From contig NW_021832857.1 of the NCBI RefSeq assembly GCF_006345805.1, forward strand, positions 32,081 through 96,080: a stretch of DNA of 64,000 nucleotides. The letters run 5' to 3'. The notes under the pieces were generated by a model. The model was not told where the DNA came from, made no database searches, and saw nothing but the letters and a program-made list of their open reading frames with translations. The DNA is from Octopus sinensis. Taxonomy: Eukaryota. Shown in pieces: positions 6,275 to 63,395 of the stretch. The first letter of the stretch is position 1; each line of letters opens with the position of its first letter. The position numbers were made by a program, and so were the translations under genes.

Positions 6275-6460
6275 CATCGTCTGTTTTAATGTCTGTTTTT
6301 CCATGCTGGCATGGGTTGGATGGTTTGACAAGAGCTAGCAAGGCCAGGAGCCACATCAGGCTCCAGTGTCTGTTTTGGCAGGGTTTCTACAGCTGGATGC
6401 CCTTCCTAACACCAACCACTTTACAAAGTGGACTGGGTGCTTTTTACATGGCACCAGCAC
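6275..6460 (-). mobile_element. Short RTE 3'-end fragment. Similar short copies at 9338-9580, 14163-14410, 37997-38442, 39704-39838 (-) and 23600-23783, 36885-37036 (+)
   Basis: Shared core ccatgctggcatgggttgga...ctacagctggatgcccttcctaa. Confidence 0.75.
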
Positions 6461-12400: not shown

Positions 12401-14807
12401 TTCACTAACGACCTTTCTTAAAAGAGCAAGTTTGAAAATATATTCAATGATGATGATCAAATTGTAGTTTCTCCAGTGAGAAAATTCTCATTTAACGTCC
12501 ACTTTCAATGCTTGCATGGGTCAGATGGAATTCATTGAAGCAGATTTTCTATGGTCAGATGCTCTTCTTGGTGCCATTCACCTCTCTCCAGGCCAAGTAG
12601 TATTTCCCTTGGCCAGAAATGTCCTTCGACATCCCACAGGATGATGTGTGGTGTCAGTCTTGTAACAAAATACATCTGCCCTTGGGAAAATCTGACCTTG
12701 CTTGGAAATAGCTGAAAGTTGGTGACAAGAAGGGCAAAACCGACCAAAGGACATCTGCCTCAGTCACCACTGTCTGGCCCAGACAAGCATGGACATGCGG
12801 AGGTCAAATGCTGTTGATAATATCTATCTACCTACCTGTCTGTCTGTCTCCCTCTCTCTTGTCTCTCTGCTTGTCTCTCTCTCTTTCCTCCTCTCTCCCT
12901 CTTCGTCTTTATCTCGTCTGTCTGCCTGCTCGTCTCTGTTTCTCTATTTATAGAGACACACACCCACACAATGGACTTCTTTCAGTTTCCATCTACCATA
13001 TCTACTCACAAGGCTTTGGTCAACCTGCAGTGAAAATAGAAGACGCTTGCCCACGGTGTCATGCAGTGTGGCTTGAACCCAAAACCACATGGCTGCAAAG
13101 TGAGATCCTTAACCACGCAGCTGGCCCTTTTCTTTCAAGGTTCCCCTCACGGTCACCCCATCACCACCACCACCACCACCATCCTCCCATTTATTAAATA
13201 TGTTTCTTTGAGTTAATGTTGTCAAATATTTGAGAAAATTATTTCTGAATTTATTTTTGTTGTAAATTGTTATTTTTTGATACAAAACAAACTTTTTTTG
13301 TCTTTTTTTAAAAAATGTTTTATGTTTTCTGTCGGTGATTTTTGCCTTTTTGGTGTCTGAAAGTTTTAAACCATTGAGTAAGAGAATTAAAAAATCTGGG
13401 TCCATTCCTGAGAAATTCACCATCATCACCACTACCATCAGCATCACCATGACCATCTTCATCATCATCATCACCACTACCATCAGCATCAGCATCACCA
13501 TCCTCATCATCATTATCACCATCACCACTGCCGTCATTTCTTTATATTCGTTAATGTGGTGGCTATAATCCATTGCCCACATCTCAGCCATTTATTATCT
13601 CTCACCTACAAGAGATGAGTCTTCATCTTTTTGTATATTGTTATTGTTTTATAGCTCAATGCCCTTCCTGTGGCCACCCACCCCCTTGAAATGGGGAGGG
13701 GCAGTCTCATCATATATGCACAACTGGAGGGGTCTGTTTGCCAGGACTACCCCACCGATTTCTACTCTAAGATATATATATCTAAATTTCCATGGTTCTG
13801 TCATTTGACTGTGACCCCTAAGTGCATGGCCTGGTGGTTGGGGTGTTGCAATCAGGATCGTGGAATCATGGTTTCAGTTCCTGGATCAGGTGAAGCATTT
13901 TGTTCTCCAGCAAAACACTTCATCTCATGTTGGTCTGTGATCACTTGGGCATCTAATGTGTTGAGTGCTGCCCACTTGTTCAGGCGATGTCGATTTGATG
14001 GAGGATGTGAGCTGATGTACAACATTTGATCACAAGAAACAAATCAATCTTTCGTCTCGTTCAGCAAAAACTGAACACTCATACATTGTCTTCGACAGGA
14101 TATTCCATCATGTATATGTGTGTGTGTGTATATATATATATACACACACACACTCACACACACATCTTCATCATTTAACGTCCGTTTTCCATGCTGGCAT
14201 GGGTTGGACAGTTTGACTTGGGACTGGCAAGCCAGAAAGCTGCACCAGGCTTCAGTCTGGTTTGGCAAGGTTTCTACAGCTGGATGCCCTTCCTAACACC
14301 AACCACTCCGAAAGTGTAGTGGGTGCTTTTTACGTGCCACTGGCGCGGGAGCCATTCAGGTGGCACTGGCATTGACCACGTACAGATGGTGCTTGTTACA
14401 TACATGCCACTGGATATATGTGTGTGTTTGTGTTTTAGCAGTTAATATGAAATTAAATAAATGGCATCAGAAATTACATAATCAACTTCATCAGCTTACA
14501 GCTGTTTCTGCTACAAGCTGTAATGCACTCAGAGCTATGAATGCAGTTAGAGGTTGATATTAAGTTGGATATCTTATATACACTCTACCCCAGTCCAATG
14601 ATATGTTTCTGCCAAATTTTAAACAATAAAATATCAAGTTCTGCACTTGTACTCTGTATTAGACACTGAGTATAGGAAAGCAATCCACTTTGATTGACAC
14701 AATTTCAGTAAGACCAATCCACAATATATACATACATATGTATGCATGTATATATTGTGTATTGTCTTTCAACAAAGATAATGCACAATATATAACATAC
14801 AAGTGTA

Positions 14808-14872
<65 letters not shown>

Positions 14873-15799
14873 GAAATTTAAAAAATGAAAGAAAGAGGCA
14901 CTCAGCACATTTTGTAGGAGTCACATATGTTGGCATTTAAAACAGTTTGATTTGGCCCCATGCAACTTAAGGTTTTGTAGGCTCAGTTAAAGGACTCAGC
15001 TGAGCCTTATAAGCTAAGCTTGTAACCGAATCAAAGGGTTTTAAATAGCACTATATCGATAATAAACGAACACCTGCACCCAACTGTTGTTTCTAGCTGT
15101 TTGTTGACCTTTATTTTGCAAGTTCATCTTCTGTTTGTCATCATTACAGTTCCCTTACAAACTTTCAAAAGGCAAAAGACCCAATTTTCAGGCAAGTGGT
15201 TCACACTGTAGTTTTAGAAATTTCTAGACTAGCCTTTACTCTTCTCTCACTAGAGGCCCTAGATCCCAGTCAACACATCACCTACCCACTCCCTTCACAA
15301 CCCTGTCACTTCCTCCTCTCTCTGTCCCTACATACTATATAACCAACCCTTTCTCATAAAAAACTAGAATAATCCCAACTTGAAAATCAAGTGCAAACCC
15401 ATCACTTCAGCTGACCCTTTGCAATACTATGGATATTCCCTTTTTAATGCCTTTTCATACTGTTTACCCCCTAATTCTCTTTAATTAAGTAAAGCACCTT
15501 CACAAATGAAGTCGATACAAGTTATTTTTTATGTCATTTTTTTTCCAAATTAATATAAATGAATATTGTTGTTGATGATGATGATGATGTCCAAATTGAA
15601 ATAAAACTTCCCTTTGATAACAATTTGTGTGATGTGAACCCTCATTCTATGATACCCCTCTCCTTTTTTTCAATTATTCAACTAAAACCTGGTAAGTTTA
15701 TGTCAGTCATTTCTGTTATGGCCCAAACACCATCTTTAAGATCCCAATATATATTTGTCTTCTTATGTCCCAAACACAATGTATTTGTTTTGCTTAAAT

Positions 15800-19580: not shown

Positions 19581-19709
19581 AACACAGCCTGTCTCGATGA
19601 CTTTGACAGAATCAAAACCCTCGGCACTGGATCGTTTGGCCGTGTGATGTTGGTCCAACACAAGGCCAACAAGGAATACTATGCCATGAAGATACTGGAC
19701 AAACAAAAG
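19581..19709 (+). CDS. Pka-C1: PKA catalytic subunit, exon equivalent to vertebrate exon 3 (glycine-rich loop and catalytic Lys)
   Basis: Acceptor tctctttcag|AAC, donor AAG|gtaaca; 129 nt, phase 0/0. Translates [43 protein letters not shown] with GTGSFG and AMK motifs. Not shown in the ORF track. Confidence 0.98.
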
Positions 19710-23097: not shown

Positions 23098-23196
23098 GTT
23101 GTTAAACTGAAGCAAGTTGAACACACATTAAATGAAAAACGAATCTTGCAAGCAGTCTCTTTCCCTTTTCTCGTCAGTCTTGAATATCATTATAAG
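23098..23196 (+). CDS. Pka-C1: PKA catalytic subunit exon 4 (alphaB/alphaC helices)
   Basis: ccaacag|GTT ... AAG|gtaagt; 99 nt; [33 protein letters not shown]. Confidence 0.98.
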
Positions 23197-23314: not shown

Positions 23315-24537
23315 GTATACAAATTGAGATAGGGGTTGTAAATGCAACCCTCCTATATGTATATTCTCTTTTTTATATATATTCTACTTATTATACAACA
23401 TTACTCTTTTATGTACACTTTTTTATGTACACTCCTTTATGTACACTGATTTGTTCTGCTTTTTATATTTAACCCTACAGTCTCTTATGTGGTGGTTTAA
23501 TAAAGTATGTGATTGAGTATTATCTGGTAATTGATATTTGATTTAGGTGTATTTCTCCATTTTCTTATCTTGTGTATATATATATATACATATATATATG
23601 GCATGTAAAAAGCACCCACTACACTCGCGGAGTGGTTGGCGTTAGGTAGGGCATCCAACTGTAGAAACACTGCCAGATCAGACTGGAGCCTGGAGCAGCC
23701 CCTGGCTCCCCAGACCCCTGTCGAACCGTCCAACCCGTGCTAGCGCGGAAAACGGACGTTAAACGATGATGATGATGATGATGTATACATATAAATGAAT
23801 AATAACAGACAATGGATAATTGTCAGCTTCTATTTTTAAATAGAAGAATGACAACATTAGCTTATTACAAAAAACCATAATCATCAGGTGAAACATCCTA
23901 GAAGCATAGGTTTATCCAACCCTACCTGGTGCATATCTTTTCAAGTACCCAATTCTTTCTGAATCCTTATTTTACTATGTATACACACACACACACACAC
24001 ACACCTTTAAACTTCTCTGAATTAAGAACTGAAATGTTAGATCCTCTCTACCCTGATGATGGAGGCTTGTCTCATCCTAAGTTGAATATAGTCGCATTTC
24101 ATAAGGAACTAAATCTCCCGACATTATTATGGATCGCCTAACCCCCACAAACAGCTGGTGGACTTACAGTATCTTTCTTCCGCCTCTTTCATTTTCTCTG
24201 TTGTTTGTACTCTTTGTAAGTTGGACCTGTTTATGTAAATATCTACAGATTTATACATATAAATTCATCATTTGAAAGTTTCAACCTTTCACTTTCTCCT
24301 GATTTGCATGTATACATATATACATGTTTTGTATTTAATACATTTGATGAGCCTAATTTCTTTATCCACATAATTGCCTCCATTTCTGCTCAATTTGATC
24401 CCTTTTATAGCCATTCTTTATGCTGTGGAATTGATATCCTGTAAAGACATCCGAGTCAAAGTTTGAATCTTTTGGGCACTACCAAGTGTCTTCTATATGA
24501 AGAATATCTGGATCTCCTCTGTGAACTATGTGTGTAT

Positions 24538-24580
<43 letters not shown>

Positions 24581-24789
24581 TACATACACACATATATCAT
24601 CATCATCATCATCATCATTTAACGCTCAACTGGTTATGGTCAAGCAACTGACAAGCAAGTCTCATGGTATTGAGCAGAATATTTGCTGTAGCCCATCTTT
24701 TATACCAAGACAAAACAATGTACATGATAACACCTCCTGTCAGTTAAGATCAGGAGCAATGAGAGCCACTGCCTGGGACTGCATCAGGC

Positions 24790-25347
24790 ATTTATTATTA
24801 TTATCATTGAGTGAGAGAGCAGTGCTGCCATCAAAGTGACACTGGGGTAAGATTTACAAAGCCCAGTATACCCGTCTGATAAGGGTACACTAGGCACATG
24901 CGTCACGACCATATGTGTGTGACATGGTAATCTCATATCAAGATAAACAGCACATGACCTTGCAGATGGGGCCCAGTCAGAATTTTCTTGTGATTGAGTA
25001 ACCCATCCCGCTCAAAAGGCCCCTGAATAAGGTTTGTTTAAGGATGATGAACAAAGCACCCATGTTTTCAGAGGTGAACTATTCAAACACCAAAGAATCC
25101 CTCTCAACACATGGCTATGATGCTCCCCCACTACTTCTGCTCGTGGTCAGAGATGCACATATCGTCAGCCACTAAGGGTCATGCTCAACTGGTTAAGGTC
25201 AAACAACTGACAAGCAAATCTGTGGTATTGAGCTGAATATTTGCTGTAGCCCATCTTTTATACCAAGACAAAACAATGTACATGATAACACTTCCAATCA
25301 GTTAAGATCAGAAGCCATGAGAGCCATTGCCTGGTTCTGCATCAGGG
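24790..25347 (-). repeat. Interspersed repeat with (AAT)n tail, with an adjacent partial duplicate at 24622-24787
   Basis: About 165 bp at 24622-24787 is nearly identical to 25182-25345 (gctcaactggtta...tttgctgtagcccatcttttataccaagacaaaacaatgtacatgataacac). Confidence 0.7.
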
Positions 25348-25365
25348 CAGAGGATTATTATTATT

Positions 25366-25959: not shown

Positions 25960-26042
25960 GACAATTCCAATCTTTATATGGTTCTAGAGTTTGTGACTGG
26001 CGGAGAGATGTTTTCTCACCTGAGACGGATAGGAAGGTTTAG
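25960..26042 (+). CDS. Pka-C1: PKA catalytic subunit exon 5 (hinge)
   Basis: tttgcag|GAC ... TTTAG|gtgagt; 83 nt, ends in phase 2; [27 protein letters not shown](S). Confidence 0.98.
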
Positions 26043-29197: not shown

Positions 29198-29324
29198 TGA
29201 ACCTCACTCCAGATTTTATGCGGCTCAAATCGTGTTGGCGTTTGAGTATCTGCACTACTTGGATATCATTTACAGAGATTTAAAACCTGAGAATTTGCTT
29301 ATTGATTCATCTGGTTACTTGAAA
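29198..29324 (+). CDS. Pka-C1: PKA catalytic subunit exon 6a (catalytic loop), alternative copy 1
   Basis: gcttcag|T GAA ... TTG AAA|gtaagt; 127 nt, phase 2/0; (S)[42 protein letters not shown]. Confidence 0.97.
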
Positions 29325-29669
29325 GTAAGTAAAGCCAGCAGTTGTTGGCAGACTTGAAAGTCTTTTGTAGAACAAGATGATGAAGAGGAGGAGAAAGAAG
29401 AAGAAGAAGAAGAAGAAGGAAAAACAGAAATGATGTCGATTGATTTCTTTCTCAGAATTGTTTTAAACCATAAGAAACAGCAGCCCCCTGAAGTCTTGCT
29501 CTTCCCCATCGATCCCTTCCCTTTCAATATTGAACTTCTTTCCCATTACCCACCTTTATCGTTTCATTTCATTCCCCAGTAATTCATATGTCTCCTCTCC
29601 TGACCCCTTCTTTTCTACCACTGTAAATTAAATCCCACCACTTCCACTCGTCAGTTATTATTTGGTCAT

Positions 29670-29705
<36 letters not shown>

Positions 29706-29780
29706 CTGCAAGGGTCATCACAGACAACTCAAGTTTGGTCAACAATCGAAGACTGGGGATTGCTTGAGCTATAACTGTGT

Positions 29781-30000
29781 TGTATCAGCGATTAGCTATA
29801 ATACATCCATGGATTTGGTGTGGATCAGGGATCAACTATAATACATCTCTTCATCTAATGTGCATTAGGGATTCACTATAATACATCTGTGGATCTGTTG
29901 TGGATCAGGGATCGACTATGACACATCTGTTGATCTGTTGTGGATCAGGGATCAACTATGACACATCTGTTGATCTGTTGTGGATCAGGGATCAGCTACA
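29781..30000. repeat. 40-bp GATC-rich minisatellite, about 5.5 copies, between exons 6a and 6b
   Basis: Unit tggatcagggatc(g/a)actatgacacatctgttgatctgttg in exact 40-nt register; the 3' copies are most homogeneous. Confidence 0.92.
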
Positions 30001-30312
30001 GTCCAGTTCTTTTCCCATTCAGTTTAATCCTGAGATACGCTCCTTTCCAACCCTTAAAATACTTTATGTAATATTTTCTGAAATGAATTAATCCAAGATT
30101 ATCCTAATCCTGTGTTTAGATCAATTCTGAGAAATGATGATGCCTGCATCATTTTATTTTCTTCTTTTTATTTAATCTTTATTATTTGTTTTTTTCTTTT
30201 TCACAGCTGTTCAACCTTGTGTGACCGAATGTGACTTTGCTGTTGCCTGGTCTTTTTGTTGTTTGTCTCTATCATCGTAACCCTTTTGCCCTTTTGCCCT
30301 TTTTCTCTACAG

Positions 30313-30439
30313 TGAGCTGCATTCCCGATTCTATGCCGCACAAATCGTGTTGGTGTTGGAATATTTACATCACTTGGATATAATGTATCGCGACCTCAAA
30401 CCTGAGAACTTGCTCATAGACTATCTGGGTTATTTGAAG
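30313..30439 (+). CDS. Pka-C1: PKA catalytic subunit exon 6b (catalytic loop), alternative copy 2
   Basis: ttctctacag|T GAG ... TTG AAG|gtattg; 127 nt, phase 2/0; (S)[42 protein letters not shown]. Open frame with many synonymous differences from 6a. Confidence 0.95.
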
Positions 30440-30882
30440 GTATTGTACCTCACCTCGCTCTCATCTTGTCATGGGGATGCTTCTAGGACACCCGCCACAG
30501 CGCCCACCACCCAAGAAAAAAAGTCAGTAGCAGCAGCTACTATCTCTCTATCTATCTATATATACACATATGTGTGTATATACATACATACTTACATACA
30601 TGCATATATATATATATATATGTATGTATGTATGTATAATGTATTTCTACATACATTCATGTGTGTGTATATAGCCTGCATCTCTGCAATACACCCGCAC
30701 AAAATGGTGGGATTTTTGCATTTCATGCTTTCACATCGTTGCCATGGTGATGGGGCTCCAACATTCAATTAGCAAATTGAATCTCTTTTCCTTCTTTTTT
30801 TTTCTCCATTTTATATATTTTTTCCCCCTTTTTTAATTACATCTGTTCATCTCTCATACATATATATATATATATATAATAT

Positions 30883-43957: not shown

Positions 43958-46303
43958 TCATCATCGTTTAAAGTCCGTCTTCCATGCTAGCATGGGTTGG
44001 ATGAAGCCAAAAGGCTACACCAGGCTCCAGTCTGATCTGGCAGTGTTTCTACAGCTGGATGCCCTTCTTAATGCCAACCATTCTGTCAGTGTAGTGTGTG
44101 CTTTTTACGTACCACCGGCACAGGTGCCAGGCGAGGCTGGCAACAGCCACAATCGGTTGGTGCTTTTTACGTGCCACCGGCACAGGTATCACAACTACAA
44201 TTTCCATTGATTTTGATGTTGATGTACTTGACTCAATAGGTCTCCTCAAGCACAGGGTCGAAACAGTGTTTCTTTACTTGCCACCTGCATAGGAGTCAGT
44301 CCAGCAGCACTGGCAACTGCCGGGTGCCAGTCATAGGATTGGTTCAATTTCGATTCCAATTTCACTTGCCCCAACAGGTCTTCACAAGCACAGTTTAGTG
44401 TCCAATGAAGGGTGGTTGGCATGGGTGCCAGTCGTCAGATGAGGTTTGATTTCAAAATTCAATTTTGACTTCACTTGCCTCAACAGGTCTTTGTGTGTCC
44501 AAGGACGGAAAGGCATGCATAAGTGGGCTGGCTACATCCCTGGCAAAGGACACGGGATGGGCTCACTTGTCCTTCCGGGTCTTCTCACGCACAGCATATT
44601 TCCAAAGGTCTCAGTCACTAGTCATTGCCTTGGTGAGGCCTAATGTTCGAAGGTCGTGCTTCACCACCTCGTCCCAGGTTTTCCTGGATCTACCTCTTCC
44701 ACAGGTTCCCTCAACCGCTAGGGTGTGGCACTTTTTCACACAGCTATCTTCATCCATTCTCGCCACATGACCATACCAGCGCAATCGTCTCTCTTGCACA
44801 CCACAGCTGATGCTTCTTAGGTCCAACTTTTCTCTCAAGGTACTTACACTCTGTCGAGTATGAACACTGACATTACACATCCATCGCAGCATACTGGCTT
44901 CATTTCTTGCGAGCTTATGCATATCCACAGCAGTCACGGCCCATGTTTCACTGCCATGTAGCATGGCTGTTTGTACACATGCGTCATACAGTCTGTCTTT
45001 TACTCTGAGCGAGAGGCCTTTTGTCACCAGCAGAGGTAAGAGCTCTCTGAACTTTGCCCAGGCTATTCTTACTCTAGCAGTTACACTTTCAGCACAACCG
45101 CCCCCACTACTGACTTGGTCACCTATGTAGTAGAAGCTATCAACTATTTCTAGTTTTTTTCCCTGGAATGTAACGGAAGTTGTTTTCTGCAGATTTTCAG
45201 TGTTTATTGCTCCTGAGCATCTGCCACATACAAAAACTATCTTCCCAGTTAGCCTTCCTTTGACATTGCTGCACCTCTTATGTGTCCATAGCTTACACTT
45301 GGTACATCTTATAGAGTTTCTACCTACACCTTTTCTACAGATCGAGCAGGGTCATCTACCTGAAGGTGTTTGTGTTTTGTCTACCTTCCTGCTTACTAGT
45401 ACTTTTGTTTTAGCTAGGTTGACTCTAAGGCCCTTCAATTCTAATCCTTGCTTCCACACCTGAAACTTCTCCTGTTCTGATAGTGACTCAGCAATTAGAG
45501 CAAGGTCATCAGCATAGAGGAGCTCTGGGGGTATGCAGTCTTGAATTCCTCTGTTATTGCCTGGAGAACTATGATAAATAGGAGGGGGCTGAAGACTGAA
45601 CCTTGGTGGATTCCTACGTCTACCCGGAATTCTTTACTGTACTCATTGCCAACCTTCACCTTACTAACAGCATCCCTGTATATGGCTCGCACGGCTCTCA
45701 CTAACCATTCATCTATCCCTAGTTTCCTCATTGACCACCAGTTAAGGGATCGGGGGAGCCTGTCAAAGGCTTTCTCCATGTCAACAAAAGCCAGGTACAG
45801 GGGTTTATTTTTGGTTAGGTATTTCTCCTGCAGTTGTCTTACCAGGAATATGGCAACAGTGGTGCTTTACCCTGGCACAAACCCAAACTGCATTTTATCT
45901 AAACTGACTCTCTCCCTAATCAGTTGGGCTATGACCATCTCCGTGACCTTCATTACCTGATCCAACAGCTTGATACCTCTGTAATTATTTGTATCCAGGG
46001 CATCACCTTTACCTTTGTAGCAGTTGACTATTATGCTGCTACACCAGTCATTGGGTATGACTCCTTCATGTATCACCTGGTTAACTATACGGGTGACTAG
46101 GCTATAGCCGACACTGCCAGATATTTTGAGCATCTCTGCAGTAATTCCTGATGGGCCTGGGGCTTTCCCGGTCTTCATGCTTCTAATTGCCTTAACTACC
46201 AGGGAACTGTCAACTCGGATTGCAGGTCCCTCTGTTGAGTCAACATTCGGCAGACTTTCTTTATCCCATTCATTTTCTTCATTCAGCAGCCTTTCATAGT
46301 GGC
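43954..46303 (-). mobile_element. 5'-truncated, disrupted RTE-clade LINE with reverse transcriptase (about 2.35 kb)
   Basis: ORFs 45867..46178 (KAPGPSG...NYRGIKLL...QFGF), 45495..45779 (EKAFD...GIHQGSVFSPLLF), LLYADDL at about 45503-45525, and ORF 44611..45027. In-frame stop and frameshifts present; 3' UTR and tail intact. Confidence 0.95.
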
Positions 46304-46404: not shown

Positions 46405-47449
46405 ATCATCATCATCGTCATTTAACATCCATCGTCCATACTAGCATGGGTTGGATGGAAGGCTGCACCAGACTCCAGTCTGATTTGGTATGGATTCTAC
46501 AGCTGGATGCCCTTCCTAACGTCAACCACTCTGAGAGTTTAATGGGTGCTTTTACGTGCCACCAGCACGGGTGCCATTTGTGTGACACTAGTATCTTCCA
46601 CAGCAGCGATTTTGCTCAGCTTGATGGGTTTTCTTCTCAAGCATGACATAATGCGAAAGGTCTGAGGCCCAACGCTTGAAAGCAACTCAGCTACTTTGCC
46701 TCTATGAGGCCCAATGCTCGAAAGGTGCTCTTTATGTGCCGATTACGTGACACCAACATCAACCACAACTACAATTTCACTTGGCTTGATGTGCCTTCTC
46801 AAGAACAGTATATCACCAAAGGTCTCAGTCACAAGTCATTGCCTCTGTGAGGCTCAAAATTCGTAGATCATGCTTCACCACTTCATGTCATGTCTTCCTG
46901 GGTCTACCCCTACCACAGGTTCCCTCCACAGTTAGAGATCGGCATCTCTTGACACAGCTGTCCTCATCCAAATGCATCACAAGACCATACCAGTGTAGTT
47001 GTCTCTCTTGCACACCACATCTGATGCCTCTTATGCCAAACTTTTCTCTCAAGACGCTTACACTCTGTCAAACATGCCCATTGACATTGCACATTGAGTG
47101 AAGCATACTGGCTTCATTTCTTTCAAGCCTATGCATGTCCTCACAGCCCATGTTTCACTGCCATGTAGCATAGCTGTTCGCACACAGGCATCATACAATC
47201 TGCCTTTCACTCTGAGGAAGAGGCCCTTTGTTGCCAGCAGAGGTAGGAGCTCTCTGAACTTTGCCCAGCCTAATCTTATTCTCACACTCTTGGAGCATCT
47301 ACCTCTGCTACTAACTTGGTCACCTCGATAACAGAAACTATCTTCTACCTCTAGCTTGTCCCCCTGGCAGTTGGTGGAGTCTGTTTCCTGCACATTTTCA
47401 GAGTTTATTCTACTTGTGCATCTTCCACATACAAAAGCTAATTTCCCTG

Positions 47450-47450
<1 letters not shown>
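46405..47450 (-). mobile_element. Second, diverged RTE LINE 3' fragment
   Basis: ORF 47058..47519 (GKLAFVCGRC...WAKFRELLPLL...AMLHGSETWAV) homologous to the neighbouring copy; (ATC)n tail at 46405. Confidence 0.9.
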
Positions 47451-47525
<75 letters not shown>

Positions 47526-49576: not shown

Positions 49577-49735
<159 letters not shown>

Positions 49736-51815: not shown

Positions 51816-51938
51816 GGTTACAACAAGGCTGTTGACTGGTGGGCCCTCGGAGTACTAGTCTATGAAATGGCAGCAGGATATCCTCCATTCTTTGCTGATC
51901 AACCTATACAGATTTATGAAAAAATTGTTTCTGGCAAG
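51816..51938 (+). CDS. Pka-C1: PKA catalytic subunit exon 8
   Basis: gttcccag|GGT ... AAG|gtaagt; 123 nt; [41 protein letters not shown]. Confidence 0.98.
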
Positions 51939-51948
51939 GTAAGTGTAA

Positions 51949-52341
<393 letters not shown>

Positions 52342-54205: not shown

Positions 54206-54331
54206 GTTGAAGCTCCTTTTATTCCAAAATGTAAAGGCCCAGGGGATGCAAGTAACTTTGATGATTACGAGGAGGTGCCACTAAGGATCTCCTCCACAGA
54301 GAAGTGTGCGAAAGAGTTTGCTGACTTTTAA
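54206..54331 (+). CDS. Pka-C1: PKA catalytic subunit exon 10 (AGC C-terminal tail, stop)
   Basis: tgtttcag|GTT ... TAA; 126 nt; [41 protein letters not shown], ending in the FxxF hydrophobic motif. Confidence 0.98.
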
Positions 54332-62869: not shown

Positions 62870-63395
62870 TTTTCTAGTGGACCCCAGTCAAGGCCTGTCA
62901 TGCCATCTATCATTTTTGTGACCTTTCAGGTACTTCAGTTTTCATGATACTTTGTTTTGTGTGGGGAGACCACAGTGGACAACAGTATTCAAGATGGGGT
63001 CAGGCAAAAGTAGAGAAGAGAAGGATAATGGTGTGGATATCTCTTGACTGGGAAGTTCTGAGAATCCAAGAAAACATTCTGCGAGCCATGTCAACTTTGC
63101 TGTTTATATGAGTGGTACAGCTTATGTTGTTCACAATTACTCCCAAGTCTCTGATATTGTTGGATGCCATGAGAGTTTCACCTGAAGGAAGGGAGTATTG
63201 GAGTTTCAGGGTATCCTCATTTCCAAAGTGGATTAACTCAAATTTGTCCTCATTCAGCAGCATGTTATTCTTTTCCATCCATTGGATGACAGCCAACAGA
63301 TCAGACTGAAGGCATGTCCGGTCACTCCATTGATGACCTTCTGGATCTTGGAATCATCTGCAAAGATTCTGATGTTACTGTGCTTAATGATGTCA
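62870..63395 (-). mobile_element. CR1/L2-like LINE reverse transcriptase fragment
   Basis: Minus strand reads IKHSNIRIFADDSKIQKVIN, then ORF 63000..63296 (QWMEKNNMLLNEDKFELIHFG...RDLGVIV). Confidence 0.8.

What the first reader, a model, noticed from the sequence alone, without database searches (positions are those of the whole stretch)
29198..30439. Duplicated, mutually exclusive catalytic-loop exons (6a/6b) in the PKA catalytic subunit
Seen: two 127-nt exons with identical phases, intact splice sites and open frames lie 988 nt apart. They differ at 7 of 42 residues (P/L, A/V, F/L, Y/H, I/M, S/Y, S/L) around an invariant [12 protein letters not shown], and most nucleotide change is synonymous, suggesting both are under selection. 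Established (from memory): Aplysia PKA-C has A1/A2 isoforms from alternative cassettes of this same 42-aa segment (Beushausen et al. 1988), and vertebrate PRKACA has a single exon 6. Inference: this is an ancient molluscan isoform switch in alphaE and the catalytic loop, retained in a cephalopod and likely missed by single-isoform annotation.
Basis: partly seen in the sequence, partly recalled or inferred. Interest (0 to 1): 0.85.

Follow-up and report, generated by a model that had tools for sequence, protein, structure and literature searches.

The report
Alternative exon-6 pair in octopus PKA
The octopus protein kinase A catalytic-subunit gene carries two interchangeable copies of the exon that encodes the catalytic loop. 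This alternative-splicing switch was described in the sea hare Aplysia in 1988, is already annotated in a sister octopus species, and proves to be shared with bivalves, snails and at least one annelid.

Summary
Exon 6a (29198-29324) and exon 6b (30313-30439) are both 127 nt, AG/GT-flanked, in the same phase and 988 nt apart. They differ at 7 of 42 residues and 34 of 127 bases, and about 24 of those base changes are synonymous.

The window is Octopus sinensis contig VCDQ01006044.1. The gene is the PKA catalytic subunit.

Only transcripts with exactly one of the two exons encode a kinase. With both, the first codon of 6b reads TGA. With neither, a TAA follows one codon into exon 7.

The pair is ancient and orthologous across species, not a local duplicate. 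The same a-then-b order occurs in cuttlefish, an oyster-like contig, the snail Physella and the annelid Lamellibrachia. The b cassettes cluster together across classes. Octopus 6a and 6b grouped together in 1 of 1000 bootstraps.

It is not new. O. bimaculoides RefSeq isoforms X1 and X2 differ only in this cassette, and many molluscs have both isoforms annotated. Only the O. sinensis model lacks 6b.

Expression in octopus and sequence identity with Aplysia A1/A2 could not be checked here.

Side findings are an a-strong/b-weak donor asymmetry conserved across phyla and a roughly 100-nt cephalopod-conserved intronic element downstream of 6b.

Interest is modest.

The parts
15150..15191 (+). 42-nt cassette micro-exon (FPYKLSKGKRPNFQ) between exons 2 and 3, with an AG acceptor and a GC donor (gcaagt)
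   Evidence: The peptide was located and the sequence read. It is present in O. bimaculoides X1/X2/X5 and in the O. sinensis model, and absent from the Sepia model.
19581..19709 (+). PKA-C exon 3 (129 nt; glycine-rich loop, Lys72 region)
23098..23196 (+). PKA-C exon 4 (99 nt; alpha-C helix)
25960..26042 (+). PKA-C exon 5 (83 nt). It ends with AG, the first two bases of the Ser139 codon.
29198..29324 (+). Exon 6a, the a-type cassette (PKA residues 140-181: alpha-E helix, catalytic loop, beta7-beta8). Donor is AAA|gtaagt.
   Evidence: Its peptide is identical to Sepia 6a and to the cassette in O. bimaculoides X1 and O. sinensis XP_036355164.
30313..30439 (+). Exon 6b, the b-type cassette ([16 protein letters not shown] signature). 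Donor is the weaker AAG|gtattg.
   Evidence: It differs by 1 aa from the cassette in O. bimaculoides X2 XP_014777148. Orthologues occur in Sepia, bivalves, gastropods and Lamellibrachia.
30440..30497 (+). Intron flank just downstream of the 6b donor, conserved between Octopus and Sepia
   Evidence: A blastn block spanning 30293-30497 aligns to Sepia 66722-66926 at 81%.
30670..30770 (+). Single-copy intronic element, 88% identical between Octopus and Sepia. Candidate splicing regulator of 6b (inferred).
   Evidence: It has no match in the oyster-like or annelid loci and no other copy in the window. It does not fold better than shuffled sequence (z = -0.3 and -0.45).
49577..49672 (+). PKA-C exon 7 (96 nt; DFG motif and activation loop with Thr197)
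51816..51938 (+). PKA-C exon 8 (123 nt)
52126..52290 (+). PKA-C exon 9 (165 nt)
54206..54331 (+). PKA-C exon 10 coding part, including the TAA stop

Best explanation
Exons 6a and 6b are two functional, mutually exclusive alternative exons of the single Octopus sinensis gene for the cAMP-dependent protein kinase catalytic subunit.

**What the switch does**
- Each mRNA takes one of the two exons. The resulting kinases are identical except for residues 140-181 (mouse PKA numbering).
- This stretch covers the alpha-E helix, the catalytic loop YRDLKPEN and the beta7-beta8 hairpin.
- The catalytic residues do not change. The a/b signature lies at 153, 154 and 159 (C-terminal half of alpha-E), at 163 (the residue before the Tyr of YRD) and at 176/177 (the beta7-beta8 turn).

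**How exclusivity is enforced (shown from sequence)**
- Exclusivity of the productive message is built into the reading frame, because 127 is not a multiple of 3.
- With both exons included, the first codon of 6b reads TGA.
- With both skipped, a TAA appears one codon into exon 7.
- Both aberrant stops lie more than 350 nt upstream of the last exon junction, so nonsense-mediated decay should remove those transcripts. That last step is inferred.

**How the choice is probably made (inferred)**
- 6a has a consensus donor (gtaagt) and 6b a weaker one (gtattg). This asymmetry is conserved from annelid to octopus.
- A roughly 100-nt element downstream of 6b is conserved between octopus and cuttlefish and is a candidate enhancer or silencer.
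- Together these suggest that 6a is the default exon and 6b is the regulated one.

**Origin and likely function**
- The pair arose by tandem exon duplication before molluscs and annelids diverged, and both copies have been kept under strong purifying selection.
- By analogy with what I recall of the Aplysia A1/A2 isoforms, the two kinases probably differ quantitatively in substrate kinetics and in their interaction with regulatory subunit or inhibitor. This was not tested.
For: **Anatomy and frame**
-.

**Gene identity**
- The encoded protein aligns end to end with 1ATP chain E residues 36-350, E = 1e-190.
- The window is 100% identical over 64 kb to O. sinensis VCDQ01006044.1.

**Isoform use in annotation**
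- O. bimaculoides X1 and X2 differ at only 6 residues, all inside the cassette.
- The same holds for isoform pairs in Crassostrea, Biomphalaria, Physella, Pomacea, Bradybaena and Haliotis.

**Transcript-level support outside cephalopods**
- Full-length spliced b-type and a-type proteins occur on 1.4-3.4 kb Logan/JGI contigs.
- Examples are Crassostrea P0265 and P0267, and the heterobranch cluster P0284/P0352-P0354.
- A cloned Lymnaea cDNA (Q4JIV3) carries the b type.

**Selection**
- Osin 6b versus Sepia 6b: pS 0.78, pN 0.04.
- Osin 6a versus Sepia 6a: pS 0.53, pN 0.
- 6a versus 6b: pS 0.92, pN 0.10.

**Orthology**
- The a-then-b order is shared by Octopus, Sepia, the oyster-like contig, Physella and Lamellibrachia.
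- In the NJ analysis the b cassettes cluster together. Octopus a+b grouped together in 1 of 1000 bootstraps, and all cephalopod cassettes in 0 of 1000.
- Type-specific donors (AAA|gtaagt for a, AAG|gtat/gtac for b) occur in all five taxa.

**Conserved intronic element**
-.
Against: - No octopus RNA evidence could be consulted. The only O. sinensis protein model that surfaced uses 6a, and no cephalopod transcript assemblies appeared in the protein searches.
- O. sinensis 6b has Leu (CTG) where O. bimaculoides and Sepia have Pro. This could be a real substitution, a polymorphism or an assembly error. The position is variable across taxa (S, T, Q, H, V, N and L are all seen), so it is not a sign of decay.
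- Bootstrap support for a single all-inclusive b clade is only moderate (515 of 1000) because the alignment has just 42 columns.
- The proposed regulatory role of the intronic element, and any functional difference between the isoforms, are inferences. The element shows no excess RNA structure and no enrichment of YCAY or GCAUG motifs.
Confidence: 0.88

Rival explanations
1. 6b is a relic. It would be a duplicated exon that octopus no longer splices in and that is drifting towards a pseudo-exon, so the gene effectively makes one isoform, as the O. sinensis annotation suggests.
For: The O. sinensis model XP_036355164 uses only 6a. 6b has the weaker donor. It also carries a Pro-to-Leu change relative to O. 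bimaculoides and Sepia.
Against: - The frame is open and the AG/GT sites and polypyrimidine tract are intact.
- pN is 0.04 against pS 0.78 versus Sepia 6b.
- There is 1 aa difference from O. bimaculoides 6b, which is annotated in isoform X2.
- The flanking intron and a downstream element are conserved with Sepia, more strongly than neutral intron sequence, which does not align at all.
- The weak donor is the ancestral state of b exons in five taxa.
Confidence: 0.04
2. The pairs arose by independent, lineage-specific tandem duplications. The octopus, bivalve, gastropod and annelid pairs would then resemble each other only by convergence or gene conversion, and there would be no ancient switch.
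For: The alignment is only 42 residues and strongly constrained, so convergence on a few positions is conceivable. Copy number varies: three in Lamellibrachia, three cassette types in one heterobranch, and two separate genes in Helobdella.
Against: - b cassettes share L154 and M163 without exception, and nearly always V153 and H159, across three molluscan classes and an annelid.
- The a-then-b order is the same everywhere.
- Even the final Lys codon and the donor hexamer are type-specific (AAA|gtaagt versus AAG|gtat).
- Within-species a/b pairs almost never group together (1 of 1000).
- Synonymous sites between a and b are saturated, which argues against recent duplication or conversion.
Confidence: 0.04
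3. Both exons are spliced in tandem, or both are skipped, to give a longer or shorter protein product rather than alternative isoforms.
For: Some automatic gene models in other species string both cassettes together, for example Pinctada P0123, Mytilus coruscus P0124 and Mya P0125.
Against: - In the octopus, double inclusion gives TGA at the first codon of 6b, and double skipping gives TAA after one codon of exon 7.
- The tandem models in other species use ad hoc internal splice sites or read through the intron, and they duplicate the catalytic loop. These are prediction artefacts.
Confidence: 0.01

Closest known systems
Aplysia californica PKA catalytic subunit, A1/A2 exon cassettes (Beushausen et al. 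1988, Neuron 1:853; the citation's existence and title were confirmed, the details are from memory)
   Same: - A single PKA-C gene and two mutually exclusive cassettes of 42 residues covering the catalytic loop.
- The Aplysia range I recall is residues 142-183. Allowing for the initiator Met and the one-residue gastropod insertion after Lys63 (PMC3625193), this equals PKA residues 140-181, which is exon 6.
- In 352-aa gastropod proteins the a/b differences fall at residues 143-182.
   Different: - The species and class differ (cephalopod versus heterobranch gastropod).
- The Aplysia sequences could not be retrieved, so I cannot say which of a, b or c corresponds to A1 and A2.
- Biochemical differences were reported for Aplysia (from memory). 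None are known for octopus.
RefSeq isoforms X1 (XP_014777146) and X2 (XP_014777148) of Octopus bimaculoides 'cAMP-dependent protein kinase catalytic subunit 1'
   Same: The same gene in a sister species. X1 carries the 6a peptide exactly. X2 carries 6b with one difference (Pro for Leu at cassette residue 2). X1 and X2 differ only inside the cassette.
   Different: These are predicted models, not a published description. The O. sinensis annotation of the very contig in this window lists only the 6a form.
Annotated a/b isoform pairs in bivalves and gastropods (Crassostrea, Saccostrea, Mytilus, Dreissena, pectinids, Pomacea, Biomphalaria, Physella, Haliotis, Bradybaena), and the Lamellibrachia satsuma exon-6 triplet
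   Same: Orthologous a and b cassettes, the same exon order, the same 127-nt length and phase, and the same type-specific donors.
   Different: - Intron sizes differ: 137 nt in the oyster-like contig and 988 nt in octopus.
- Some lineages have a third cassette. Lamellibrachia has an extra upstream copy. One heterobranch has a 'c' cassette with HRD in place of YRD.
- Leeches carry the b-like cassette in a separate gene.
JNK (MAPK8/9/10) exons 6a/6b and p38-alpha (MAPK14) alternative exons: mutually exclusive exons inside a kinase domain (own knowledge)
   Same: A tandem-duplicated, equal-length exon pair inside the catalytic domain gives isoforms with an identical fold and tuned substrate or partner preference.
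   Different: A different kinase family, a different part of the domain (subdomains IX-X rather than VIa-VII), and an independent, vertebrate origin.
Vertebrate PRKACA/PRKACB and C. elegans kin-1 isoform diversity (PMC3625193, PMC5526564; own knowledge for kin-1)
   Same: Orthologous genes with the same exon 3-10 architecture. Isoform diversity comes from alternative splicing.
   Different: As described in those papers, vertebrate diversity lies in the alternative 5' exons, plus exon-4 skipping in primate C-beta. Exon 6 is single.

Membership tests
PKA catalytic subunit (PRKACA/PRKACB orthologue, AGC kinase) | Full kinase core with GTGSFGRV, the Lys72 region, [11 protein letters not shown], the activation-loop [15 protein letters not shown] motif and the C-terminal FxxF tail; high identity to solved PKA C-alpha | tested here: met
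   Exons 3-10 translate to 315 aa. These align without gaps to 1ATP chain E residues 36-350 (E = 1e-190). tblastn against mouse C-alpha gives 71-100% identity per exon.
PKA catalytic subunit (PRKACA/PRKACB orthologue, AGC kinase) | Conserved exon 3-10 lengths and intron phases shared by bilaterian PRKACA/B genes | tested here: met
   Exon lengths are 129, 99, 83, 127, 96, 123 and 165 nt. PMC3625193 states that exon lengths and phases are conserved across bilaterians with introns. That these exact numbers match human PRKACA is from memory.
Aplysia-type A1/A2 mutually exclusive exon-6 cassettes of PKA-C | Two tandem homologous exons of equal length and phase encoding the 42 residues around the catalytic loop | tested here: met
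   127 nt each, the same phase, 35 of 42 residues identical, 988 nt apart.
Aplysia-type A1/A2 mutually exclusive exon-6 cassettes of PKA-C | Only single inclusion preserves the reading frame | tested here: met
   both exons in gives TGA at codon 1 of 6b; both out gives TAA in exon 7.
Aplysia-type A1/A2 mutually exclusive exon-6 cassettes of PKA-C | Both cassettes are found in mature mRNAs, one per transcript | not testable with these tools
   No octopus RNA data were available.

Indirect evidence:
- O. bimaculoides models X1 and X2 differ only in the cassette.
- Spliced full-length a and b forms occur on transcript-sized Logan contigs of oysters and a heterobranch.
- A Lymnaea cDNA carries the b type.
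Aplysia-type A1/A2 mutually exclusive exon-6 cassettes of PKA-C | Cassette sequences orthologous to Aplysia A1 and A2 | not tested
   The Aplysia proteins did not appear in any hit list or cluster, and the Aplysia papers are not held. Orthology to a/b cassettes of other heterobranchs (Physella, Biomphalaria, Elysia, Lymnaea) was tested and met.
Aplysia-type A1/A2 mutually exclusive exon-6 cassettes of PKA-C | The isoforms differ in kinetics or regulation | not testable with these tools
   This needs recombinant protein assays.
Mutually exclusive exons enforced by competing RNA secondary structure (Dscam-type docking/selector) | Conserved intronic sequences able to pair, with structure support | tested here: inconclusive
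   A conserved intronic element exists. However, it folds no better than shuffled sequence (z = -0.33 and -0.45). With two near-identical sequences, no covariation test is possible. No complementary partner was searched for systematically.
Mutually exclusive exons enforced by steric hindrance or U2/U12 incompatibility | An inter-exon intron too short to splice (under about 60 nt), or mixed splice-site classes | tested here: not met
   The inter-exon intron is 988 nt in octopus, 356 nt in Sepia and 137 nt in the oyster-like contig. All sites are GT-AG.

The most novel reading that the evidence does not exclude
The exon-6 a/b switch would not be a molluscan invention. It would be a Cambrian-age or older cluster of mutually exclusive exons shared by molluscs and annelids.

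- It has kept the same exon order and the same strong-a/weak-b donor asymmetry for more than 500 million years.
- It expanded to three cassettes in some lineages, including a heterobranch 'c' cassette that turns YRD into HRD.
- In leeches it was resolved into two separate genes.
- In cephalopods, a near-invariant element of about 100 nt downstream of 6b would be the splice switch.

I found no paper in the searchable library that describes this distribution.
Probability: 0.6. Interest if true: 0.45.

Novelty: already known. Interest (0 to 1): 0.27.

Why it matters
PKA is the central kinase of cAMP-dependent synaptic plasticity, and cephalopods and Aplysia are the classic molluscan models for it.

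Octopus can make two catalytic subunits that differ next to the catalytic loop. This matters for anyone who annotates, knocks down or expresses 'the' octopus PKA, and the 6b exon should be added to the O. sinensis annotation.

As biology it is a confirmation, not a discovery. The switch was described in Aplysia in 1988 and is already modelled in O. bimaculoides and many other molluscs.

The modest added value comes from three points:
- The pair is shared with an annelid.
- The splice-site asymmetry is equally old.
- There is a concrete conserved intronic element to test as the regulator.

Tried and rejected
**Aplysia A1/A2 sequences not obtained**
- Three protein searches and two cluster look-ups did not surface them.
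- The 1990 and 1992 Beushausen/Bayley papers (PMC362957, PMC48508) are not held.
- Full-text searches found only citations.

**First search biased to short hits**
- The 102-aa query returned only fragments of 180 aa or less, so it could not show whether a full-length 6b isoform exists. The 315-aa query did.

**Loci not retrievable**
- O. bimaculoides genomic DNA: the gene range exceeds 100 kb, or the product is not on record.
- Owenia and Tubulanus loci: not on record.
- As a result, no octopus-to-octopus dS could be computed, and there was no test in a basal annelid or a nemertean.

**Negative results**
- No third exon-6 copy in the window. No c-type copy in Physella.
- RNA structure in the conserved intronic element: the predicted hairpins are no more stable than shuffled sequence.
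- Nova-type YCAY clusters and Rbfox GCAUG sites near the exons: no enrichment, and no GCAUG at all.
- The conserved element has no match in the oyster-like or annelid loci.
- No Rfam family anywhere in the window.

**Other**
- The recent mussel sperm PKA-C paper (PMC13425070) discusses only 5' exons, not the internal cassette.
Full report
**What is there**

On the + strand the window holds exons 3-10 of a cAMP-dependent protein kinase catalytic-subunit gene. The coordinates are:
- exon 3: 19581-19709
- exon 4: 23098-23196
- exon 5: 25960-26042
- exon 7: 49577-49672
- exon 8: 51816-51938
- exon 9: 52126-52290
- exon 10: 54206-54331, ending in TAA

The exon lengths are 129, 99, 83, 96, 123 and 165 nt, which I recall as matching vertebrate PRKACA. 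The product aligns without gaps to mouse PKA C-alpha in 1ATP, residues 36-350, E = 1e-190.

Both are 127 nt, both follow a pyrimidine tract and AG, and both precede GT. Both begin with the T that completes the Ser139 codon and end on a Lys codon. They are 988 nt apart. They differ at 7 of 42 residues and 34 of 127 bases, about 24 of them synonymous.

**Where the window comes from**

The 64 kb are 100% identical to Octopus sinensis assembly GCA_006345805.1, contig VCDQ01006044.1. The window runs to the end of that contig. Exon 2 lies upstream of the window, at L003 11881.

**Is the second exon already known?**

Yes, in the sister species.
- RefSeq lists O. bimaculoides 'cAMP-dependent protein kinase catalytic subunit 1' isoforms X1 (XP_014777146) and X2 (XP_014777148).
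- They are 435 aa each and differ at six residues, all inside the cassette.
- X1 carries the 6a peptide exactly. X2 carries 6b except that it has Pro where the window has Leu (CTG) at cassette residue 2. Sepia 6b also has Pro.
It is a substitution, a polymorphism or an assembly error. It is not part of the a/b signature.
- The only O. sinensis product that surfaced (XP_036355164, with no isoform label) uses 6a.

**How old is the pair?**

*Other loci with the same arrangement*
- Sepia pharaonis has 6a (peptide identical to octopus) and 6b 356 nt apart in the same order.
- An oyster-like Logan contig has a and b 137 nt apart.
- Physella acuta has a then b 629 nt apart.
- The annelid Lamellibrachia satsuma has three exon-6 copies 150 and 148 nt apart. 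The second is a-type and the third b-type. It also has two exon-4 copies.

*Annotated pairs and transcripts*
- Isoform pairs that differ only in the cassette exist for Crassostrea, Biomphalaria, Physella, Pomacea, Bradybaena and Haliotis.
- Both cassette types are also annotated, on separate isoforms, in Saccostrea, Mytilus, Dreissena and the pectinids.
- A cloned Lymnaea cDNA has the b type.
- One unnamed heterobranch has transcript-sized contigs with three cassettes in otherwise identical proteins: a, b, and a 'c' type that reads HRDLKPEN instead of YRDLKPEN.
- Helobdella has two genes, one with an a-type and one with a b-like cassette.
- A small metagenome contig with a b-like exon fused to exon 7 resembles that second gene.

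*Tree of 53 cassettes*
- In a neighbour-joining analysis the molluscan b cassettes plus the Lamellibrachia third exon cluster together.
- A broad b clade has 515 of 1000 bootstraps, which is moderate because there are only 42 columns.
- Octopus 6a and 6b grouped together in 1 of 1000 replicates. All cephalopod cassettes grouped together in 0 of 1000.

*Signatures*
- L154 and M163 are invariant in b cassettes, and F154 is invariant in a cassettes.
- The last Lys codon and the donor are type-specific in all five taxa examined: AAA|gtaagt for a, and AAG|gtat (gtac in Lamellibrachia) for b.

These results reject independent duplications. In the search made with a b-type query, arthropod, chordate, nemertean and bryozoan proteins showed only a-like cassettes. 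This is suggestive, not proof, that b is restricted to a subset of lophotrochozoans.

**Selection**

Synonymous sites are saturated while non-synonymous change is small:

| Comparison | pS | pN |
|---|---|---|
| Osin 6a vs Osin 6b | 0.92 | 0.10 |
| Osin 6b vs Sepia 6b | 0.78 | 0.04 |
| Osin 6a vs Sepia 6a | 0.53 | 0 |
| Sepia 6b vs oyster-like 6b | 0.50 | 0.04 |

The last pair gives dN/dS of about 0.055. Both exons have been under strong purifying selection. 6b is not neutral.

**How it works**

*Shown from sequence*
- Because 127 is not a multiple of three, only single inclusion gives a kinase.
- With both exons in, the first codon of 6b reads TGA, 508 nt upstream of the last exon junction.
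- With both out, the message reads Arg then TAA in exon 7, 380 nt upstream of the last junction.

*Inferred*
- Such transcripts would be removed by nonsense-mediated decay, so the productive mRNA pool is mutually exclusive by construction.
- Steric hindrance and splice-site class incompatibility do not apply. The introns are 137-988 nt and all sites are GT-AG.

*The choice between exons*
- The sequence offers two leads: the conserved strong-a/weak-b donor asymmetry, and conserved intron sequence downstream of 6b.
- Apart from microsatellite matches, Octopus and Sepia introns between exons 5 and 7 align only around these exons. The aligned pieces are about 20 nt upstream of each exon, 58 nt downstream of 6b (30440-30497), and a single-copy element at 30670-30770 that is 88% identical.
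- That element is better conserved than exon 6b itself (81% over the blastn block that contains the exon).
- It does not fold better than shuffled sequence. It has no GCAUG motif and no YCAY enrichment. It is absent from the oyster-like and annelid loci.
- I read it as a cephalopod-specific binding platform for a splicing regulator of 6b. That is inference only.

**What differs in the protein**

In standard PKA numbering (from the alignment), the cassette covers residues 140-181. The conserved a/b differences are:

| Position | a type | b type | Location |
|---|---|---|---|
| 153 | A/S/T | V | C-terminal half of alpha-E |
| 154 | F | L | C-terminal half of alpha-E |
| 159 | Y | H | C-terminal half of alpha-E |
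| 163 | I/V | M | residue before Tyr164 of the YRD motif |
| 176/177 | variable | often hydrophobic at 177 | beta7-beta8 turn |

Catalytic residues D166, K168 and N171, and the LLID strand, are unchanged. From general knowledge of the PKA fold, these positions lie in or next to the hydrophobic core that couples the catalytic loop to the rest of the C-lobe. Quantitative tuning is more likely than a qualitative change. From memory, the Aplysia A1 and A2 enzymes were reported to differ in peptide kinetics and regulation. I could not re-read those papers.

**Comparison with the known case**

The existence and title of Beushausen et al. 1988 are confirmed by citation. I recall that the Aplysia cassettes encode residues 142-183. 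This fits exon 6 exactly once the initiator Met and the one-residue gastropod insertion after Lys63 are counted (PMC3625193). In 352-aa gastropod proteins the a/b differences fall at 143-182. Sequence-level membership could not be tested because the Aplysia proteins did not surface in any search. Because heterobranchs can have three cassette types, I cannot say which two correspond to A1 and A2.

**Verdict**

The finding is real and correctly interpreted, but it is a known kind of isoform switch. It is already modelled in O. bimaculoides and many other molluscs. The practical outcome is a missing alternative exon in the O. sinensis annotation. The modest new points are shared ancestry with an annelid, an equally old donor asymmetry, and a testable conserved intronic element.

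Noticed in passing
window 15150-15191 (+): A 42-nt micro-exon (FPYKLSKGKRPNFQ) with an AG acceptor and a GC (not GT) donor. It is inserted between exons 2 and 3 in the O. bimaculoides X1/X2/X5 and O. sinensis models and is absent from the Sepia model. Gastropod isoforms have optional 5-residue inserts at the same junction.
   Followed up: partly
window 30440-30497 and 30670-30770 (+): Intron sequence downstream of exon 6b is conserved between Octopus and Sepia. The 101-nt block is 88% identical. It is single-copy, shows no excess RNA folding, and is not found in the oyster-like or annelid loci.
   Followed up: yes
window 29322-29330 and 30437-30445; L004, L001, L006, L005: a-type exons end AAA|gtaagt and b-type exons end AAG|gtat (gtac in Lamellibrachia) in all five taxa. 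The synonymous Lys codon and the donor strength are therefore type-specific across phyla.
   Followed up: yes
window 30317-30319: Codon 2 of exon 6b is CTG (Leu) in O. sinensis. O. bimaculoides X2 has Pro and Sepia has CCA (Pro). This is a real substitution, a polymorphism or an assembly error.
   Followed up: partly
window 29784-29998, 29369-29418 and 29669-29694: The 6a-6b intron holds a 40-nt tandem repeat (5.4 copies, 84% matches), an (AGA)n run and a (TG)13 run. These account for much of the size difference from the 356-nt Sepia intron.
   Followed up: no
window 47058-47519 (-) and 63000-63296 (-): Degenerate ORF fragments that look like the C-terminal part of a non-LTR retrotransposon reverse transcriptase. 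One lies in the 19-kb intron between 6b and exon 7, the other downstream of the gene. This is judged by eye only.
   Followed up: no
window, e.g. 6285-6460, 14163-14344, 23599-23779, 24624-24804, 25183-25364, 44003-44183: A dispersed repeat family of about 180 nt (80-91% identity between copies, both orientations) is scattered through the introns. It is probably a SINE.
   Followed up: no
L005 15545-15643 and 15766-15864; L005 18798-19475: The Lamellibrachia satsuma PKA-C gene has two tandem exon-4 copies as well as three tandem exon-6 copies. Annelids may therefore run two clusters of mutually exclusive exons in this gene.
   Followed up: partly
proteins P0284, P0352-P0354 (unnamed heterobranch transcripts); P0152 (Perinereis): A third 'c' cassette ([35 protein letters not shown]) replaces YRD with HRD in a heterobranch. 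Perinereis has a cassette with the same AAQVC start in a protein that is 98% identical, over its full length, to relatives carrying an a-type cassette.
   Followed up: partly
proteins P0193 and P0355 (Helobdella); locus L002: The leech has two PKA-C genes, one with an a-type and one with a b-like cassette. A metagenome contig (L002) carries a b-like exon fused directly to exon 7, which indicates intron loss in such a paralogue.
   Followed up: partly
protein P0130 (Branchiostoma lanceolatum model): The gene model contains a second, partial exon-7-like stretch ([24 protein letters not shown]). This hints at a duplicated exon 7 in amphioxus.
   Followed up: no
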